DNA of 64,000 nt from Neoconidiobolus thromboides FSU 785 (lineage: Eukaryota > Fungi > Entomophthoromycota): NCBI GenBank assembly GCA_025603075.1, contig MU626352.1, forward strand, positions 17,437 to 81,436, in the 5' to 3' direction. A model generated the notes under the pieces. The model was not told the origin of the DNA and searched no databases. It saw only the letters and a program-made list of their open reading frames with translations. Of the stretch, positions 8,743-24,574 are shown piece after piece (position 1 is the first letter of the stretch; each line of letters opens with the position of its first letter). Made by a program: the position numbers and the translations under genes.

Positions 8743-10431
8743 GGCGCGATGATAGTAAAAATTAAAATTAAAGAAATAAAGATAAAATGTTTTTAACTAA
8801 AGTGCCACTTTATGTTATTAAAATGACTATCATTGGGTAAAAAAAAGATGGAATTTGTTGAAAATTTGTTAATATTTTGTTATAATTTCTATTTTTTGTG
8901 TTGAAAATTTTAAAATGAACTTTGTTTTAAAAATCACCTTTTTTACACCTACTGCAACTCATTTGCAATCTACTCAACTGTTCAATTAAAAAAATAACTT
9001 ACAAAACTCCTAAGAAAGGTTGGGCTTTAAAAAAGCCAGATAAGCAAATATTTAGTTCTAAGGATTATCGCAAAATAGGTCAAAATAGAGCTGTGGCAGT
9101 TATAACCTAGTTGGACTATTTTTTAGGATTTTAGGATTTGAGTTTTTTGACTTGAAATGAATAATTGTGAATAAAAAATATGTAATATTTTATTTTAATA
9201 AATAAAAATCAATAAATCAAAGCTACACGAATTGAAATAGTATCTATTTATTTACTAAATAACATTTAATAGTAAAACATTAAATATATTATAACCATAT
9301 AAAGTAGTTTATATAATATAATAAAATGAATTTAAAAAGGTTGCTTAATTTGAAAGCGTTTTGTAGAAAAAAGTTAATTACTTATATTCATTTAAATAAA
9401 ACCTAACTATAAGTTCAACTATTTGAATAGCTTGTAATCTTCATAAAATTGTTTGAATATTTTATATAAGTGTCTACTAGTTAAAAACTTGTAAACAATA
9501 ACTAAGCTTTATTCTAGTTTTATTTTCCGGGTCAAAGTTGAGTTATACTTTTAAAGCGAGACAAATGAAATTAATGCTTTTCTTGTATTTTTAATAGAAT
9601 TTTATATTAAACCTTTGTGAATACGCTTTTTTAAAATACTAAATAATTGCAGATTATAACTTTATAATATAAATAATTAGCACTGACTAAAAAATTACAA
9701 ATTTTAATCAAACTATTTTTTATCGAAAAATGATTACATAAATTAATTACAAACAATAAAAGGTTCATGAACCAAAAATAGTAAATTTAAGCTAAAGAAG
9801 TTTCTAGAATAAATCATTTGAATTTATGGTTCGCTTAAGGGAGAAGGACATCACTTAAAAAGAAATAATACTTTGTAAGTTAACTCTATTTATAATAATG
9901 GCAATATAACAGAAAGAATGATCGAATAAGGCTAGTTGGAATTCTAAAGCTTCGTATCTATTAAAACATTCTAAATAAACTTAGATTTTATCTAACAGGT
10001 TAGAACAAAAAGAAAAAAAAGGAGAATTTACAAATAGTTAAAACTGTAGAATAAAAAGAAAAACGGTTTAAGGTGGTAGCATAACCTTAATCAGTTATGG
10101 GTTAGCTTTTATTTGTTAATCAATTAGGTAAATATAATTAAGTTTATGCTTTCTAAAATCGTTGTCTTGAAAATAATCATCCGAATAAAACTTGTTATTG
10201 GTTTCTTCAACTTCTAGAATAAATAGAAATTGGCATAAGCAGCTTTTTTAAAACACTGCTAAAACCAGATGATCTTTAAAAGTTTCAAAATGGCAAGTTT
10301 ATAATTTACAAAAATAAAAGAGGATCTGACTACTAAAAAATAGTATAAATACTCAAAATATCTACTATTCACTCTTATCATATCATTATTTAAATTTTCA
10401 TTTTCTACATTTAATACTTAATTCAAAAATT

Positions 10432-11070
10432 ATGAAATCCATCTCATTACTCGCTGTAACTTCCCTTTTTTTGAACTCTATTTCATCTCATGTGACTGCT
10501 AATCCCGCTGTTGGATTAGCTGGTAGCTATTTTGTTACTTTTATTCGTGTACCTCATGGTTGTGGTACATCTGGTACTACCAAAGTAACGGTAAATCTCA
10601 CTGATGATTTAACTACTGGAGCCACTGCTCAAAGCGTTTCTGGATGGAAAGTAAGTTATGGTTACCCTAATGATAAACAAGGTAGTACCAACAGCACTGA
10701 AGGAGAATCAGGTGGAGCATCCAAAGTCCCTAATTCAGTTACTTGGGAAGCTCAAAATAATGCTGAATTACCCCATGATCAATTTATGGATTTTGGACTT
10801 TCTCTTAAATTACCTCTTACTGCTACTTACAATAATACCATCTATTTCCCTACCATGCAATATTGTAAAAACGGTACTGGTGACTGGTCTTCATGGCCTG
10901 GAAACCCAGGTCAAAATCCTGAAAAAACTCCAGCTCCTAAACTCGTATTGACCAATAGTACCGATAGTACTGCTTCTAAAACAGGTCCTAAATCAAATGC
11001 CATAAGTCTAAGCCCAGTATATTATTCATTCGCTTCCATGGGCTTGGTTGCATTTACTTTCTTGTTGTAG
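10432..11070 (+). CDS. secreted YcnI/DUF1775-family copper-binding protein with probable GPI-anchor signal
   Basis: Signal peptide followed immediately by HVTANP. Motifs RVPHGC, TTKVTV, GWKV, SVTWEA, FMDFGLSLKLP, YFPTMQYC, W and PAP are typical of bacterial YcnI. A Ser/Thr linker precedes a hydrophobic C-terminus. Intronless. Confidence 0.85.
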   Translation: MKSISLLAVTSLFLNSISSHVTANPAVGLAGSYFVTFIRVPHGCGTSGTTKVTVNLTDDLTTGATAQSVSGWKVSYGYPNDKQGSTNSTEGESGGASKVPNSVTWEAQNNAELPHDQFMDFGLSLKLPLTATYNNTIYFPTMQYCKNGTGDWSSWPGNPGQNPEKTPAPKLVLTNSTDSTASKTGPKSNAISLSPVYYSFASMGLVAFTFLL

Positions 11071-12276
11071 ACTGATCATCCGCTATTCTTTATTCTTCAT
11101 TATTCTTAATAAATATATTATACATTTTAAATTATATTAAATACTAACTTAATGAATAAGAACTGTTGATATAAAATAGAATAGGAAATCATGTTAATAA
11201 AATAATGAAATTGTACTAAATATTGGAATCCCAGTTAAATAAATAACAAATCAATATAGTTTTATAAATCAATACCAGATTAGAATTTCACAATACTAAT
11301 TGTATTATTATAAGACATCATGTTTAGTCAGTAGCTTTAATTTATGAAAGATTTAGATCAACTTTTTAGCATAAAAAATTACTTAAAAGTTTTAGTAAAG
11401 AGATTGATAAAAAATTTAATACATCTATATACATTTAAATATGAAACATGTTACATATGATCATATAGCTTTGTATTTTAATATAAGTTTTTATTACGGG
11501 CACAGCTATTCAAAAAAACGTCATAAAACCTTCTTCTACCCCATAGCCTACTTATAGTAATTTATTAAAATTAATGTTGATAAAATCTTAGTAAAGTTAC
11601 AGAGAATCAACTTATTCTATGTACTAATGGATTTTTAATAATACTTTCATCCTTCAGATGTTAAAGTTAAATTTTTGAATGCCTAGTGCTTTTTTGCCTA
11701 GGCCTTATTACTAAATTAATAACGCTGGTCTAGAGAGTTGATAAAGTTGCTTATTTTTATCTCCCCCAAGCTCAAGCTTATAATTAACTAATTTCAACCT
11801 CTTGTCTTCTATATTTTCTCTCTTTAGACATTATTTAGCATGTTTTTTGGGCTTCCTGTATATTCTATCTGTATGGGTATCTTATTCATATACTTTAGAT
11901 AATCATCGTAATGAGCATAGTATAATATATAAATAGAGATCCTTTTTTGTACATGATCATGATATTTTATGTTTCAATTAACTATTCTAGTTATTTGGGT
12001 CATTAATAGGCAATATTATAAAATTATCTTTGATTTCTTGATTGGGTTTCTTTCCAGTTCATTGTTCTCTTTACGAATGAAAAGTTTTCTTGTCTAAATA
12101 GTACCTTACATTTTTTAGGCTTAACTACTCGAAATCTGAAAAAGAAATTTTCACTAATGTAGTTTTTAGTTCTTTGGTACTATATTTGAAAATGCTGTTT
12201 GTTCTTGACCTTTTATTATGGATTGTTATTTGAAAGATACTACTTTAACTACTCATTAAAAACTAAAAACATCCCC

Positions 12277-18208: not shown

Positions 18209-19618
18209 ATGGATTGTTTAACAGGTAGTGAAATCAAAGAAGCTTTAAAGCAACCGCAATTAATAGAATCTACAATTCGGCAATTATATGAACAAATTCA
18301 ACCTAAAGAAAATCAATTACATTTATCTACTCTATTGATCTATTTAAAACATTCTCCCAATATTGAAGAGATATTAAATTATTGGGAAACATTAGAATCA
18401 TCTAATTCCACTCATTTCCAAGTAAATATCCATCTACTTCAACTAATAATATGGAGTTTAGAATTATTATCTTATGATGAAGAGGTATTACAATTTAAAG
18501 GTCATAATGAAAGAAATTCATTGATTAAAAAATTGATATTAAAATTTAATGATAAAATTATGAGTTATTTAAAAGTTAATGTAGCTAAATTACATCAGCT
18601 TTGTTTTAAATTATTGAAAACAATTGTCTTTTATTTTAATGGTAATTTCAATGAAGTGTTTATTGTGTTTCAAATGAAACCACAAGTAAGTTAAATAAGA
18701 GAAAAGGCTTTAATTGATTTTATAATTGATATTTTATTTTTAGATTATTGGTCGCGTTTTAAATAATATTAAAGTTAATGAAGAATTTTTGGATGGTAAA
18801 AGTGTACAAGAATATCAAGAGCAAGAAAGGAAGAGTAAGTTTAATAATTCAACTAATAATAAGATAATACTTAATATAATAATAATTTATATAGAAACTC
18901 GATGGGAATTTTTGAGGTATTGTGAAACTTGTTTTGAAGTGATTAAATATAATAAATCAAATTGGAATTTAACTTATCAAATACCAATTCAACGATTAGT
19001 TAAAGGATTACATTTGGATGATCCAGAGTTTATATTAAATCTTTTTAATATCTTAACTAAGTTTATAGTCAATATTATTAGTAATACAAATTATAATAAC
19101 AAGATGTTTTTATTTGATTTATTTAATGATGATTTTTTAAGTAAAGTAAGTTTTATTTTTAATTTAATTTATTGTTATGAGTTAAATGTTAATGTAATTT
19201 TTAGTGCTTAGAATTATTAAATAATCATCAAATTGTGAATGATAATAATAATGAAATTGAAATATCAGATTTAGTTTATAAATTTTTAGTATCAATATGT
19301 AGTGTATCAGGCTATGGTATATGTATTAAATCTAATGGATGGAATGAAATAGAAACAATAGTGATTCAACAAAGTAATGAAAAAAAGAAGAGAAAAATGA
19401 ATAATAATAAATTATTAGAGTTTTGTTTTGGGTTACAAGCAAATACTAATTTAATTCATCAAAAATTATTATTAACAATATTTAATACTTGTCCCGAATT
19501 AGTATCTTATTATTGGAATTATTGTAATTTAAGTTTTGAACCAAGATTATCTGTTAATTGGTTAAGTAATATTTCATTATTATTGAAGATTATTAATTTG
19601 GATGTCCCAGAATTTAAC

Positions 19619-19654
<36 letters not shown>

Positions 19655-22600
19655 CAACAATTACAATTACAACAATTACAATTACCTTCATTTAAAGTAA
19701 TAATTGAAAACATATTACCACAAAATATATTGAAAACATATCAATTAAAAGGAATTCAACATGATAACAAAATGATTCAATATTATACATGTTTAGTTAT
19801 TAAAATTAGTTTTAATAAATTGGAAAAAGTAAATCAACAAATTCAATTATATATTCAGCAATATAAATTATTAAATCAAAGCAAAATTGTCAAAAAATAT
19901 CAAGAATTAAATGAACAAATTCAATTAGAATACAAAAAAAGAATATTAGATTTTCAATCTTTATTAACAATGACAAATAATTTAAATTTAATCAAAAATG
20001 AAAAAAAACAATATTTATTACAAGAAATTAATTTAAAACTATTAATCGATTATTTGAAATATTTTCCAGATTTAGTATTACAATCAAATATCGATTTCAA
20101 TAAATTTATTATTAACAAAAATATTACTAAATTAAGTCCATCAATTCAATCGAATTTATTAAGTTTATTGGAAAATTTGGCGGAACTTAAATGGTATTCC
20201 AATCAACCAGATAAAAAAGAATCAATTTTAATACAAATTATTAAAATTTATATTAACAATTCGGGTAATAATAAAAATAAGAGTGATAAAATTCAATTAC
20301 AAAGTAAAAAAGTAATTGAAAAATATTTTAGTTTATCTAATTTATTTAATAATAATAATAATTTAAATCAATTAGAATTAAATATTTGGTTAAATTGTAT
20401 TCAATTATTTCAAAATAAGAATATTATTTATTCAATATTAGATTTTTCATTTACTTATTTTATTAAATATTCATTTGCTTTAATAGATCAATTAATTTAT
20501 TTACAACAACAACAACAGAATAATATCGAAGTAACAACAGTACCCTTTTCACCATTATATTTAGCAGTGTTAGTTATCTTTAAAGATCAAATTCAAGATC
20601 AAAACATTGGAAAAGAAGATAAATTAATAATAACTCAATTTTTAATGACAATCAGTATCGATTTAACTCATTTTATTAAAGATTTTCAATTAATTTATAA
20701 AGTATTAAAGGAGTTTTATGTTCAAAATCAAAGTATTATTATGAAAGAGAAAGAGATTAATGAGTTATTTATGACTATATTGAGTTATCTTGGTAATTAT
20801 TGTAAAGATAAGGAAATGAAGATTATAATGACGGATAAAGTATTTCAATTTAATACTAGCTTATTACATATTATAAATCAATTAAAAGTAAATAATGGAC
20901 AATTAAATGAAATTAAAAAACAATTAAATAATAACAATAATATAATTAATAGTCAATTATTTTATCAATTAATAAAAATCATCACTAAAGATACAATAAA
21001 TGAATTTAATAGTAACATAATAATAGAATTTATTCATAATAATTATTATTATTTAAAAGGAATTATTAATTTCAATTGGATTCAAATTGAAAATTATAAT
21101 GAATTAAAACCAATTATTGAGTTTTTTAAATTGATTCAACCTAATATATTTCTATACTTAATTAATGAAGAATGCTTTGAGAGTGAATATTCTAAATTAA
21201 TATTTTATTATTATAATGAACATTATGAAGTTGAATTTAATTTTATTAGTAATTATTATTTATTCTTAATGAATCAAAGTAATAATAATGATAATAAAAG
21301 GATTAATTCTTTGTTTTTAATCTTATTTAACAATATTGATATTCAATTGCAATCACAATTTAAGTTCAAAGAGAAAAATATCAATCAATTTATTAATAGA
21401 ATCGGTTTATTGTTGGAGAATGAATGTATTAAAAGAAATTATTTAAAAGGAAATTTAATAGCAAAATGGATCAATCAATTGTTATTATTTGTTTTAAATA
21501 GTTTCCAAAAGTTTCAAATGGATTCCAATAGAATAGATTTTATATTAAAATATTTCAAAATTCAATTAATGGAATTCATTGAAAGTAACAATAATGGAAT
21601 AGAAAATGATGAGAACATCATTATGATAATCAATTATTTAATACCTAAATTTCAGTATAATGAAGAAGAAAGAATGGGATTAATTATTAATCAATTAATA
21701 TTAAAAAACAATCAAATTAATTTATTATGTATTAAATTAATATTAAAAATTAAAAATCTCAATATTAAACAATGGTTATTTAGTCAACATTTAAATTTAA
21801 TATTAGAAACTTATTTAAATAATAAGAGTAATAATAAAAATTGGGATTTAATTTTATTAGATTTATTGCATACTTTAGTTCCATTTATTAAAGTGGAATT
21901 AAATCAAGAGAAATCAATTAGTTTAGAAGAAGAAAAAGAAGAAAAAGATAATAATAATAATAATAATAATAATAATTTAATTCAACAAAATTGGAAACTA
22001 ATTAATAATAATCCAATGATAGAAAAAATATTAAATAAATTAATGCGATTTAATTTAAATAGAAATGAGATCAAAGTCTTATTAAGTATATTAATATTAA
22101 ACCGAAAATATAAATCTATCTTTACGCAATTTTTATTAAGTCAAAAGATTCTTATTGATGAATTGAATTTTCAACAATATTTTGAGTTATTTAAAAATTA
22201 TTTTAATATGTTAAGATACAAGGAAAACAATGAGGACTTAATTTATTTTGATTCAACTGATATTACAGATAAAAAAGTAATGAAAAAAATTAGTCAAATT
22301 TATGTCCAATTTTTGATAGAAAAGGAAAGATATGAAATGGAGATGTTAAATTTATTTTTACCTTATATAAAAGAAGATGAGAAAAATGTGATTAACATAT
22401 TAAAACAATGGAAATTGAAAAAATGGAATCAAATTCTAGATATCAATAGAGAAGAATTAATATTACTATTTTGGAAATTTCAATTATGGAAAAGTGAAGA
22501 TATTGATATTATTTTTAATCAAAATAGATTTGAGGAGATTTCAAAAGAACAATTAATTCAATATTGTAATAAAATGATTGAGTTGATGAAATGTTATTTT

Positions 22601-24574
22601 GATCAAAATGAAAAGGAGAAATTGAAGGATAAAAAAATGGTTTTATTTTTGTTCAAATTAGTTTCAACTTACTTAAAAATGGAATTCAATGTTAATGTTT
22701 TTAAATGTTTTGAGTATTTCGATTTAAATGTAATGAATCAAATGGTAAAGTTTATTTTTATTTTTATTTTTATTTTTATTTATTTTTATTTTTAGAAGAG
22801 TGAAGTTGAATTAATAATTATTGAAGTTATGGATAAAATAGAAAATTTAGAATTACAACATCAATTAATTCAATTAATAGTTCAATTTTATAATATTAAT
22901 CCAAATTTTGTATTAAAAAAAGAAATATTAATTAAATTAATAAGTATTTATCAAGGATATTATACAAAAGATCAACGTCAACTATTAAAATTAATTTGTA
23001 ATTTTGAAATTAAAGAGTTAATGTCTACAAGAAGTTATTTATTATTATTTGATAAATTAATCTTTAAATTTAATGAATGGGAAATTAAAAAATTAATAAT
23101 GAATGGAGATATTGTTACTCATTCGATGGACAAATTAGAAGCTAGTAATGTACTCTTTTCTTGTAATCATTTTCCAGTGAATGTAAGTTTAAATCAATTA
23201 GAATTATTAACTGAGAAACAAGAAAAGGAAGTTCAATTTGTCAATGAAAATAATAAGGAAAATTCAATCAAAATTTATGATCCCTATTTTTTATTAAATT
23301 TAATAGCTAATTATTTTACATTTGGTAATAATTTAAATGTAGAAACATTTATTAAAAAGAATTTATTAAATTATTTAATAATATCTTTATCATCCAATGA
23401 ATCAAGTACTCGCTATATAGCTTATAGATTATTAGATGAAGTTTATAATTTAATTATGACTAGTAAATTTATCGAGAGAATACAAGTATTAACGGTCTTA
23501 AATTTATTAAAAAATTCAATAGAAGATAGAGAATCTAATCCAAGAATTCCATCGGGTATTACAAATTTTATTAGTTTATGTTTACAAACAGTGATGAATC
23601 CAAAACATTCAATGTATCTTTTAATTAATCGATATCTCTTAGCTAAACCTAATTTGAATTTCAAAGAGTTGCCCTTTTTTAGTAAGATGATGGAAGGATT
23701 TCATAAAAATTCAAATGCAGAAAGAAAATGGATATTAAAATTAATTAAAAATAGTATCAAGAATGAATTAGATTTAAAATTAATTAAAGTAAAAAATCAA
23801 TTATTATTACAAACTTATTATTTTTCACCAGTTAATGGAAGTACATTAATGGAATTACATCAATTACCAATACTTGAATATTTATTTAATGTAGCTAGGT
23901 TTAATCCAAATCATCAATTTTATTGTATTAAAGTTCATTTATTTGAATTTTTGTTGAGAATTATAGAATATGAAATTCAAAATAATAAATTAAAAAGTAA
24001 AATAATATTACTAATTACTATTCGAATTAGTAATATGTTTATATTGAACAACAAAATGAATAAATTATTGATTGGCTGGCCATTATGGAATAATAAAATA
24101 ATGATGTTTTATTTTAAAATTATTCAAATATTAAAAGAGAATTTAAATAATTTAGAAGATTATGCAATTGTATTGAATTGTTTGAATGAAGTTACGAGAG
24201 GTGTATTGAATGTATTAAGATTTAATCAACAATTTAATATTGAATGGAATCACTCAATGGTAGAAAAAATGATTGAAAACAATGTATTTATTGTTAAACA
24301 AAGTATTAAAGAAGGGAATATTAATTTAATCAATAATAATTCAGATAATGATAAGAATAACTTCAAGATTATTATCAATAATGAAAATGAAGAACAGAAT
24401 TATAATAGTTTAAATTTTGAATCAATTAAACAAATGAAACAATTAGATACTTGTTTAATTGAAGTGATTGAAAATGGGCTATTGATAACTAGCTATATAG
24501 GAAAAATGGAGCCTAATTTGATGATGTGGGGATTCCAATTGAAATTGGAATTTATTAGAAATTTATTGTTTTAA
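18209..24574 (+). CDS. URB1: nucleolar pre-ribosomal-associated protein 1 (Urb1/Npa1), multi-exon
   Basis: LSFEPRLSVNWLSNISLLLKII near the N-terminus. C-terminal NopRA1-like block YDPYFLL...ISLSSNESSTRYIAY...PRIPS...MNPKHSMYLLINRYLLAKP..ELPFF...ERKWIL. Contains poly-Asn tracts. Joins ORFs 18209, 18789, 19235 and 22829 via short introns. Confidence 0.85.

What the first reader, a model, noticed from the sequence alone, without database searches (positions are those of the whole stretch)
10432..11070. Bacterial-type YcnI copper-binding protein remodelled as a fungal GPI-like surface protein
Seen: an intronless gene in an intron-rich genome, with His as the first residue after the predicted signal cleavage (SISS|HVT), YcnI/DUF1775 motifs (RVPHGC, GWKV, SVTW, FPTxQxC, W, PAP), and a Ser/Thr linker plus hydrophobic tail. 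Known: Bacillus YcnI binds Cu(II) through an N-terminal mono-histidine brace plus a Glu; the family is mainly bacterial. Here the Glu position falls in PHGC, and two Cys could form a disulfide. Inference: a horizontally acquired, codon-ameliorated gene repurposed as a cell-surface copper acquisition or buffering protein, which would be relevant to host copper immunity if this fungus is a pathogen.
Basis: partly seen in the sequence, partly recalled or inferred. Interest (0 to 1): 0.78.

Follow-up and report, generated by a model that had tools for sequence, protein, structure and literature searches.

The report
Fungal surface copper-binding YcnI protein
This insect-associated fungus makes a cell-surface version of a copper-catching protein known only from bacteria; it is not a recent bacterial pickup but belongs to an old, unstudied fungal branch that sits beside copper-importer genes in other fungi.

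Summary
Window 10432-11070 (+) is a real, transcribed, unspliced 212-aa gene. It has a signal peptide, then His20, a full-length DUF1775/YcnI domain (Pfam E=3e-28; model matches YcnI crystal structures, TM 0.86), a Ser/Thr linker and a GPI-type tail.

The genome is Neoconidiobolus thromboides FSU 785, which also carries a tandem DUF1775 pair elsewhere. Relatives with the same eukaryotic layout occur in Chytridiomycota, Blastocladiomycota, Zoopagomycota, Mucoromycota and oomycetes. In a careful tree, 32 of 34 bacterial representatives lie beyond a supported branch. The window gene groups with Entomophthorales genes, including its own paralog. Seven of 12 fungal genes have introns, and GC3 matches the host. 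So this is not a recent transfer.

PHGC...QxC is not a fungal remodelling. It marks a large bacterial class whose genes follow CopC-CopD importer genes.

A copper-uptake role is supported by neighbourhood. In three fungal groups the gene lies beside a Ctr importer, and in two also beside a DOMON (haem) gene, one fused to cytochrome b561. This window has no such neighbour.

The scan found this family before on other DNA of this genome (s1-255128), with the same conclusion. Copper binding, GPI anchoring and the second-His ligand remain untested.

The parts
10344..10351 (+). TATAAATA, a candidate TATA box about 41 nt upstream of the first base covered by an RNA contig
   Evidence: Read directly from the sequence. 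The 5'-most RNA contig base is 10392. This is an inference: contigs cannot fix a transcription start.
10392..11086 (+). Extent covered by contigs of RNA runs: an unspliced mRNA of at least about 0.7 kb
   Evidence: contigs of X5, X8, X9 and X12 lie only here. There are none in the flanks 9900-10391 or 11087-11600, and no joints.
10432..10488 (+). Signal peptide, residues 1-19 (MKSISLLAVTSLFLNSISS), with predicted cleavage SISS|H
   Evidence: Hydrophobic core at residues 3-17. In 272 aligned homologs the invariant His is preceded by A/G/S at -1 and A/V/T/S/I at -3. No SignalP was available.
10489..10950 (+). DUF1775/YcnI domain, residues 20-173, of the PHGC class
   Evidence: Pfam E=3e-28. The AlphaFold2 core has pLDDT 93-97. 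Foldseek finds YcnI 7MEK/7ME6/8UM6 at TM 0.86 and 3ESM at 0.79.
10489..10491 (+). His20 codon, the predicted N-terminal residue and copper ligand (equivalent to YcnI His27)
   Evidence: Aligns to residue 1 of the mature YcnI chain. Present in 272 of 274 homologs.
10555..10563 (+). His42-Gly43-Cys44 of the PHGC motif. Gly43 sits at the YcnI Glu50 position. His42 is the candidate replacement ligand. Cys44 is half of the proposed disulfide.
   Evidence: H-G-C...C occurs in 255 sequences and N-E-x...Y in 9, and the two patterns are mutually exclusive.
10864..10866 (+). Cys145 in the FPTMQYC motif, the proposed disulfide partner of Cys44
   Evidence: both Cys are present in 258 sequences, both absent in 16, and only one present in none.
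10885..10887 (+). Trp152, equivalent to YcnI Trp137, which stabilises the copper site
   Evidence: Profile alignment to 7ME6. Present in 272 of 274 homologs.
10951..10992 (+). Ser/Thr-rich linker, residues 174-187 (TNSTDSTASKTGPK), including one N-glycosylation sequon
   Evidence: AlphaFold2 pLDDT is 54-64 here, consistent with disorder.
10993..11070 (+). GPI-attachment-type signal and stop codon. The best omega site is Ser188 (S-N-A), followed by a short spacer and the hydrophobic tail YSFASMGLVAFTFLL.
   Evidence: Rule-based reading. All named fungal homologs end the same way, whereas bacterial ones have a transmembrane helix plus a basic tail, or no tail at all. No GPI predictor was available.

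Best explanation
The gene encodes a secreted, probably GPI-anchored, glycosylated cell-surface protein of Neoconidiobolus thromboides. Its single domain is a YcnI/DUF1775 beta-sandwich of the 'PHGC' class. After signal-peptide cleavage, His20 becomes the N-terminus and binds Cu(II) through its amino group and imidazole, as in B. subtilis YcnI. The Glu ligand of YcnI is missing; His42 is the likely third ligand, which would make a two-His brace. A Cys44-Cys145 disulfide holds that loop in place, and Trp152 caps the site. The protein is proposed to capture scarce extracellular or wall-bound Cu(II) and pass it towards a Ctr importer, probably after reduction to Cu(I). That role parallels bacterial YcnI with CopC-CopD and Cryptococcus Cbi1/Bim1 with Ctr1. 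The gene is one of at least three paralogs in this genome. It belongs to an old eukaryotic (mostly early-diverging fungal) branch of the family, inherited vertically within Entomophthoromycotina. Shown here: family membership, fold, transcription, lack of splicing, phylogenetic position, the conservation pattern, and Ctr/DOMON linkage in other fungi. Inferred: cleavage site, GPI anchoring, copper binding, His42 as a ligand, the disulfide, and hand-over to Ctr.
For: Family and fold. The invariant N-terminal His follows an AxA-type site in 272 of 274 homologs, and Trp152 is equally conserved. The Cys pair co-occurs perfectly, 258 both / 16 neither / 0 single. PHG and NE are mutually exclusive. 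Expression: contigs in four runs (two on record as RNA, two guessed RNA) cover only the ORF plus short UTRs, one of them (X8, guessed RNA) from a run labelled with the source organism at word depth 5810. Variants in those contigs are 18 synonymous to 15 non-synonymous and spare the conserved sites. Copper link for this class in bacteria: the PHGC-class genes in L013 and L014 directly follow CopC-CopD(-YtkA) genes. Copper link in fungi: a Ctr gene is adjacent in Calcarisporiella, Synchytrium (divergent, 229 bp apart) and Mortierella. A DOMON/CDH-cyt gene lies immediately downstream in the first two, and the Calcarisporiella one also carries a cytochrome b561 domain (verified in 78, 80, 82). YcnI biochemistry: PMC8424229, PMC12362106. 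Cbi1/Bim1 analogy: PMC9258870. A CYBDOM protein with Cu-reductase activity: cited in PMC10784552. Vertical descent.
Against: No Ctr or DOMON gene lies in this 64-kb window, nor beside the paralogs or the homologs in C. coronatus, E. muscae, Hyaloraphidium, Umbelopsis, Polychytrium or Allomyces. Linkage is therefore seen in only 3 of 11 fungal loci examined. No PHGC-class protein has a solved structure or a copper-binding measurement. Damle et al. note that members lacking the Glu may use another ligand set or have another function. His42 sits next to the Glu-equivalent position, not at it, and I could not read model coordinates to check the geometry. The -3 residue is Ile and the -1 residue is Ser, which are allowed but uncommon in this family. 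I found no copper-responsive promoter motif.
Confidence: 0.6

Rival explanations
1. One reading: a recent horizontal acquisition from bacteria, later adjusted to host codon usage and given eukaryotic targeting signals in this lineage.
For: The family is overwhelmingly bacterial (PMC8424229). Of 1249 hits, most of the best 150 look bacterial. This particular copy has no intron.
Against: Homologs with the same eukaryotic layout occur in four fungal phyla and in oomycetes. A branch with 99/84 support separates 32 of 34 bacterial representatives from all eukaryotic sequences. The window gene's nearest relatives are Entomophthorales genes and its own paralog, with 98/85 support. Seven fungal homologs have introns, and one intron position is shared by two chytrid orders. 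GC3 is 0.24, inside the range of neighbouring genes, 0.15-0.31.
Confidence: 0.03
2. It is a copper buffer or shield rather than an uptake aid. On this view the surface protein, present in several copies, soaks up excess Cu(II) at the wall and protects the fungus from copper toxicity, for example in the insect host or in soil.
For: The same binding chemistry would serve either role. The gene is not next to an importer in this genome. Word depth in the run labelled with the source organism is very high, which would suit a stoichiometric binder. Cbi1 loss alters resistance to high copper in Cryptococcus (PMC9258870).
Against: In both bacteria and fungi the conserved genomic partner is an importer, CopCD or Ctr, not an exporter or metallothionein. 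B. subtilis ycnI supports growth under copper limitation (PMC12362106). One site per protein gives poor buffering capacity.
Confidence: 0.15
3. It is a redox-active histidine-brace protein. On this view the PHGC class forms a true two-His brace and acts as an oxidoreductase or electron-transfer partner, LPMO-like on wall polymers or a copper-dependent relay fed by DOMON/cytochrome b561 proteins, rather than as a chaperone.
For: His42 is conserved in 265 of 274 sequences and excludes the Glu ligand. The neighbouring gene in two fungi carries a CDH-type cytochrome/DOMON domain. To my knowledge that domain type reduces LPMO copper in Dikarya. The FEBS Letters review raises electron transfer as a possible YcnI role (PMC10952591).
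Against: No catalytic activity is known for any DUF1775 protein. I saw no substrate-binding surface or carbohydrate module. Ctr adjacency is explained more simply by reduction of Cu(II) to Cu(I) before import.
Confidence: 0.12
4. It is a non-metal structural or adhesive wall glycoprotein that merely keeps an Ig-like fold inherited from YcnI.
For: The fold is an Ig-like sandwich also seen in cohesins and pilins, which appear as weak Foldseek hits. The protein has a GPI-type tail, a Ser/Thr linker and five N-glycosylation sequons.
Against: The metal-site residues (N-terminal His, His42, Trp152, Gln143) are almost invariant across bacteria and eukaryotes. That conservation would not be expected without the site being in use. 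Linkage to Ctr also argues against it.
Confidence: 0.07

Closest known systems
Bacillus subtilis YcnI (DUF1775, PDB 7ME6/7MEK; Damle et al. 2021, PMC8424229; PMC12362106)
   Same: Same Pfam family and same fold (TM 0.86). Both are extracytoplasmic, with His as the first mature residue. The capping Trp is conserved. Both have a C-terminal membrane tether. Both are genetically linked to a copper importer, in related members.
   Different: The Glu50 ligand is replaced by Gly, with His42 beside it. A Cys44-Cys145 pair is present that YcnI lacks. The tail is GPI-type rather than a transmembrane helix. The host is a eukaryote, and the protein has N-glycosylation sequons. The partner importer in fungi is Ctr, which is unrelated to CopC-CopD. 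Sequence identity is only about 26%.
Bacterial PHGC-class DUF1775 proteins (for example Gaiellaceae L014, Egicoccus P0006, Paenarthrobacter 'YcnI family copper-binding membrane protein')
   Same: They share the same diagnostic motifs: H...VPHGC...QxC...W...PAP. Identity is 30-39%. They belong to the class that Damle et al. describe as having His and Trp but no Glu.
   Different: The bacterial proteins end in a transmembrane helix with an Arg/Lys tail, or are short periplasmic proteins. Their genes follow CopC-CopD genes in operons. They form the other side of a supported branch.
Cryptococcus neoformans Cbi1/Bim1 and the X325 LPMO-like family (PMC9258870, PMC10952591)
   Same: They work in a similar way. 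They are GPI-anchored fungal surface proteins with an N-terminal-His copper site, and they act with a Ctr importer under copper limitation.
   Different: The fold and family are unrelated: there was no Pfam or sequence match, and the top structural hits are YcnI only. X325 is reported from Dikarya, whereas this family was seen only in early-diverging fungi and oomycetes among the named hits.
Fungal DUF1775 entries in databases (C. coronatus KXN70832 'DUF1775-domain-containing protein'; UniProt 'YncI copper-binding domain-containing protein' in Synchytrium, Basidiobolus and Boothiomyces; an ESM Atlas cluster of 92 eukaryotic members)
   Same: The same eukaryotic branch with the same layout. They are true orthologs or paralogs of this gene.
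   Different: They carry only automatic names. None of the 10 papers mentioning DUF1775, nor those pairing YcnI with fungi, deals with a eukaryotic member.

Membership tests
DUF1775 / YcnI (PF07987) | Full-length match to the family HMM above the gathering score | tested here: met
   99.5 bits against a cut-off of 25, E=3e-28, profile 1-146 of 146.
DUF1775 / YcnI (PF07987) | Cupredoxin-like or Ig-like beta-sandwich superimposable on the solved YcnI and 3ESM structures | tested here: met
   AlphaFold2 mean pLDDT 82.8, core 93-97. Foldseek: 7MEK, 7ME6 and 8UM6 at TM 0.86 and rmsd 2.5 A; 3ESM at TM 0.79; the next hits fall to 0.5 or below.
DUF1775 / YcnI (PF07987) | His as the first residue of the mature protein (mono-histidine brace) | tested here: met
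   His20 aligns to residue 1 of the YcnI chain. It follows a signal peptide with Ser at -1 and Ile at -3. The actual cleavage site is not testable here.
DUF1775 / YcnI (PF07987) | Glu ligand equivalent to YcnI Glu50 | tested here: not met
   The aligned residue is Gly43. This is typical of the PHGC class and does not exclude family membership: about 35-40% of the family lack the Glu according to PMC8424229.
DUF1775 / YcnI (PF07987) | Conserved Trp capping the copper site (YcnI Trp137) | tested here: met
   Trp152 aligns with it and is present in 272 of 274 homologs.
DUF1775 / YcnI (PF07987) | 1:1 high-affinity Cu(II) binding | not testable with these tools
   This needs ICP-MS, EPR or ITC on recombinant protein.
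DUF1775 / YcnI (PF07987) | Gene next to a copper importer (CopC-CopD/YcnJ in bacteria) | tested here: not met
   There is no CopC, CopD, Ctr or DOMON gene in the window. An analogous Ctr neighbour is present in 3 of 11 fungal loci.
Two-histidine 'histidine brace' proteins (LPMO, CopC, X325) | A second His side chain coordinating the same copper as the N-terminal His | tested here: inconclusive
   His42 is conserved in 265 of 274 sequences and is mutually exclusive with the Glu ligand. Model coordinates could not be read, and no PHGC-class structure exists.
GPI-anchored fungal surface proteins | N-terminal signal peptide plus a C-terminal omega site (small residues), a short spacer and a terminal hydrophobic stretch with no cytosolic tail | tested here: met
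   This rests on rule-based reading only. Ser188-Asn-Ala, then a spacer, then 15 hydrophobic residues ending the protein. The same pattern holds in all named fungal homologs. No predictor was run and there is no biochemical test.
X325 / Cbi1-Bim1 LPMO-like copper proteins | Sequence or fold homology to LPMO-like X325 domains | tested here: not met
   The only Pfam hit is DUF1775, and there is no LPMO or X325 among the structural hits. It is a functional analogue only.

The most novel reading that the evidence does not exclude
The eukaryotic PHGC-class YcnI proteins may be the copper-capture part of an ancestral three-part fungal uptake module. In that module a GPI-anchored two-His-brace protein binds Cu(II). 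A neighbouring DOMON/CDH-cytochrome protein, fused to cytochrome b561 in one of the two cases seen, carries electrons across the membrane and reduces the bound copper. Ctr then imports the Cu(I). The module would have been kept as a gene cluster in some chytrids and Mucoromycota, dispersed in Entomophthoromycotina, and functionally replaced by X325/Bim1 plus Fre reductases in Dikarya.
Probability: 0.25. Interest if true: 0.7.

Novelty: new variant of a known kind. Interest (0 to 1): 0.5.

Why it matters
YcnI/DUF1775 has been studied only in bacteria, and only in its Glu-containing form. This gene belongs to a eukaryotic branch that spans the early-diverging fungal phyla and includes insect, amphibian-associated and opportunistic human pathogens (Conidiobolus, Basidiobolus), as well as oomycete pathogens of fish and crops.

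If the protein works as proposed, these fungi solve the 'hand Cu to Ctr' problem with a different fold from the Cbi1/Bim1 protein of Cryptococcus. That would be an independent case of a GPI-anchored N-terminal-His copper protein.

The PHGC class also offers a natural test of whether a second His can replace the Glu of the mono-histidine brace.

The Ctr-DUF1775-DOMON/b561 arrangement gives a concrete, testable model for extracellular copper reduction in fungi that may lack the classical route.

Tried and rejected
1. NCBIfam scan of the protein gave no family.

2. Rfam scan of the whole window at gathering threshold found nothing.

3. A paper search for the assembly accession returned no papers. 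The organism was identified instead because P0126, named N. thromboides FSU 785, lies on the same assembly.

4. The word-index search with the mixed alignment A1 was swamped by Arthrobacter-group sequences and found no further fungi. The exhaustive profile search was needed.

5. tblastn with Ctr and DOMON exon pieces against the window and loci L001, L003, L004, L005 and L009 gave no hits.

6. Promoter comparison of six Entomophthoromycotina DUF1775 genes found no shared GC-containing 8-mer. A single Mac1-type CuRE match appeared, in C. coronatus only, which is chance level.

7. The first 'quick' 159-row tree was poorly searched. A constrained search later found a tree 53.7 log-likelihood units better (p-AU 0.857), so that AU test says nothing about whether the window gene lies inside or beside the other fungi. 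I rely on the careful 77-row tree instead, whose bootstrap had not fully settled (correlation 0.92).

8. I considered and dropped the idea that PHGC and the two Cys are a fungal innovation.

9. Model coordinates are not exposed, so the His20-His42 and Cys44-Cys145 distances could not be measured.

10. In one search, exons of seven fungal homologs were joined inside a script, only to locate introns by exact match to the database proteins. No joined sequence was printed or sent to a search tool, and Pfam checks were done exon by exon by reference.

Full report
**What is there.** Window 10432-11070 (+) is a 212-aa open reading frame starting with ATG.
- Pfam places residues 20-173 in DUF1775/YcnI (PF07987) over the whole profile: E=3e-28, 99.5 bits against a cut-off of 25. 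NCBIfam gave nothing.
- Against the PDB the only sequence relatives are 3ESM (Nocardia) and B. subtilis YcnI. Query His20 aligns to residue 1 of the mature YcnI chain, and Gly43 aligns to the YcnI ligand Glu50.
- An AlphaFold2 model built on a 97-sequence alignment has a core pLDDT of 93-97. Foldseek returns only YcnI (7MEK, 7ME6, 8UM6; TM 0.86, rmsd 2.5 A) and 3ESM (TM 0.79) as strong matches.
- The first 19 residues form a signal peptide.
- The domain is followed by a linker, TNSTDSTASKTGPK, which is half Ser/Thr.
- After the linker come a plausible omega site (Ser188-Asn-Ala), a short spacer and 15 hydrophobic residues that end the protein with no charged tail. I read this as a GPI-attachment signal by rule of thumb; no predictor was available.

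**Expression.**
- Contigs from four public runs lie only on 10392-11086. Two runs are on record as RNA. One of the others carries the source organism's label and has word depth 5810.
- Nothing lies in the flanks and there are no joints. The gene is therefore transcribed as an unspliced message of about 0.7 kb.
- Divergent alleles in these contigs carry 18 synonymous and 15 non-synonymous changes, none at the conserved sites. That is roughly dN/dS 0.26 by my own rough count, which fits purifying selection.
- The deposited gene model in the collection (P0001, 181 aa) lacks the first 4 and last 27 residues of the ORF.

**Whose genome.**
- P0126 is named 'Neoconidiobolus thromboides FSU 785' by NCBI.
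- It is encoded on assembly GCA_025603075.1, the same assembly that holds the window. The window is therefore from N. thromboides (Entomophthoromycotina, Zoopagomycota), a saprobe and broad-range arthropod pathogen (PMC9409958).
- Fungal markers in the window agree: a Zn2Cys6 domain and an Rtt109-type HAT.
- The genome has at least three DUF1775 genes: this one, and a tandem pair of 247 aa and 202 aa on scaffold MU626434.1.
- Conidiobolus coronatus also has a tandem pair.

**Not a fungal remodelling.**
- In an alignment with bacterial relatives, the columns His20, Pro-His-Gly-Cys-Gly 41-45, Trp72, Gln143, Cys145, Trp152, Pro167 and Pro169 are invariant.
- Across 274 collected homologs the pattern H-G-C...C occurs 255 times and N-E-x...Y occurs 9 times.
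- The two Cys are either both present (258) or both absent (16), never one alone.
- PHGC plus the Cys pair therefore defines a large class of the family. It is the class Damle et al. describe as keeping His and Trp but lacking the Glu, possibly with another ligand set (PMC8424229).
- The perfect co-occurrence supports a disulfide. The exclusivity of His42-Gly43 against Asn-Glu makes His42 the natural candidate for the missing ligand. Both points are inferences.
- No PHGC-class structure exists.
- What did change in eukaryotes is the tail. Bacterial members end in a transmembrane helix followed by Arg/Lys, or have no tail. The eukaryotic ones end in an uncharged hydrophobic stretch and carry N-glycosylation sequons.

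**Not a recent transfer.**
- The exhaustive profile search found 1249 relatives at E up to 1e-3. About 35 of the best 150 have the eukaryotic layout.
- Those that carry names come from the following groups:

| Group | Genera or taxa |
|---|---|
| Chytridiomycota | Hyaloraphidium, Synchytrium, Quaeritorhiza, Boothiomyces, two Phlyctochytrium, Lobulomycetales, Polychytrium, Cladochytrium |
| Blastocladiomycota | Allomyces, Blastocladiella |
| Zoopagomycota | Syncephalis, Conidiobolus, Neoconidiobolus, Entomophthora, Massospora, Basidiobolus |
| Mucoromycota | Calcarisporiella, Mortierella, Umbelopsis, Benjaminiella |
| Oomycetes | Saprolegnia, Aphanomyces |

- No Dikarya were among the named hits. 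This is not proof of absence.
- The ESM Atlas holds a 92-member, all-eukaryote cluster auto-named 'YncI copper-binding domain-containing protein'.
- In the careful 77-row tree, 32 of 34 bacterial representatives form one side of a branch with 99/84 support. All eukaryotic sequences and two bacterial-looking ones lie on the other side.
- The window gene pairs with P0002 (59% identity, 100/99). That pair joins Entomophthora, Massospora, P0005 and the window genome's own paralog P0126 (98/85). Deeper eukaryotic relationships are an unresolved comb and the tree is unrooted.
- Seven of 12 fungal genes examined have one to four spliceosomal introns. Synchytrium and Polychytrium share a phase-1 intron in the Pro codon of VPHG.
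- The gene's GC3 of 0.24 lies within the range of neighbouring genes, 0.15-0.31.
A very old bacterial origin of the whole eukaryotic branch remains possible but is not shown.

**Why copper uptake.**
- B. subtilis YcnI binds Cu(II) 1:1 with femtomolar affinity through the N-terminal His, Glu50 and Trp137. It supports growth under copper limitation and exchanges Cu(II) with the CopC domain of the importer YcnJ (PMC8424229, PMC12362106).
- For the PHGC class, I checked the closest bacterial loci returned by the genome scan. In a Gaiellaceae MAG and another Actinomycetes MAG, the PHGC-class gene directly follows a CopC-CopD(-YtkA) gene. A third locus has CopC upstream.
- In fungi the importer is the unrelated Ctr family. 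A Ctr gene lies next to the DUF1775 gene in three loci:
  - Calcarisporiella (Mucoromycota);
  - Synchytrium (Chytridiomycota), where the two genes are divergent and 229 bp apart;
  - Mortierella.
- In Calcarisporiella and Synchytrium, the gene immediately downstream encodes a DOMON/CDH-type cytochrome domain. In Calcarisporiella it is fused to cytochrome b561 (27.2 bits against a cut-off of 23).
- Plant DOMON-b561 (CYBDOM) proteins are ascorbate-dependent trans-membrane reductases, and one is reported to reduce copper (PMC10784552, citing PMC10784544).
- Ctr is known, from established knowledge, to carry Cu(I). A capture, reduce and import arrangement is therefore a coherent reading.
- Ctr genes are few per genome. 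Three adjacent pairs in three distant lineages out of 11 loci is far more than chance by my rough estimate (order 1e-6), but it is not universal.
- No Ctr or DOMON gene is found in the window, at the paralog locus, or in C. coronatus, E. muscae, Hyaloraphidium, Umbelopsis, Polychytrium or Allomyces.
- The closest functional analogue is Cryptococcus Cbi1/Bim1, a GPI-anchored histidine-brace protein that works with Ctr1 under copper starvation (PMC9258870). It has an unrelated fold.

**What remains open.** Cleavage before His20, GPI anchoring, copper binding, the role of His42, the disulfide, and regulation by copper are all inferred. I found no shared promoter motif. The alternatives I considered are a copper buffer, a redox-active brace protein fed by the DOMON cytochrome, and a non-metal wall protein; they are weighed in the rival list.

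**Literature and novelty.**
- All 10 papers that mention DUF1775, and all that pair YcnI with fungi, concern bacteria or only cite the family.
- Databases already auto-name the fungal proteins, so their existence is on record, but the eukaryotic branch is unstudied.
- I re-derived both points independently. I add the identity of the genome, the bacterial CopCD context of the PHGC class, the Cys-pair and His/Glu exclusivity statistics, the intron evidence, the DOMON/b561 neighbour and the RNA evidence.
- I rate it a new variant of a known kind, of moderate interest.

Noticed in passing
L004:5842-7615 (N. thromboides scaffold MU626434.1) and L005:8001-10566 (C. coronatus): Both Conidiobolus-type fungi carry a head-to-tail tandem pair of DUF1775 genes. 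In N. thromboides these are 247 aa and 202 aa, and the 202-aa copy has a 75-nt phase-0 intron. In C. coronatus they are 203 aa and 209 aa.
   Followed up: partly
L009:4080-8824 (Hyaloraphidium curvatum): A 529-aa protein (P0125) holds three consecutive DUF1775 domains, each beginning with its own His, followed by one GPI-type tail. Only the first His can be an N-terminus unless the protein is processed. It lies divergently beside a single-domain paralog (P0140).
   Followed up: partly
P0138, P0172, P0275 (Saprolegnia, Aphanomyces) and P0258 (Polychytrium): A 'PHSY/PHSF ... QxT' variant keeps His42 but has lost both cysteines together. It is a natural experiment on whether the disulfide is needed.
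   Followed up: no
window 10444-10986 versus 10432-11070: The gene model held in the protein collection (P0001, 181 aa) lacks the start codon region and the last 27 residues, which include the whole GPI-type signal. RNA contigs cover the full ORF.
   Followed up: yes
window 10406-11067 (RNA contigs of runs X5 and X12): A second haplotype or close relative, about 5% divergent, is co-present in a poly-A metatranscriptome and in another run. The transcript also turns up in fish-gut RNA libraries, so the fungus or a close relative is widespread in environmental samples.
   Followed up: partly
L006:5195-7613 (Calcarisporiella): Three small genes without Pfam hits (245, 74 and 203 aa) sit between the Ctr gene and the DUF1775 gene. 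They may be further members of the same copper cluster.
   Followed up: no
P0142 and P0171: Two short, bacterial-looking periplasmic PHGC proteins fall on the eukaryotic side of the main split. They are the best lead to a bacterial sister group.
   Followed up: no
window 19235-24574 (+): Very AT-rich long ORFs (GC 18-20%, GC3 15%) with Npa1/NopRA1 ribosome-biogenesis domains show how extreme host codon bias can be in this genome.
   Followed up: no
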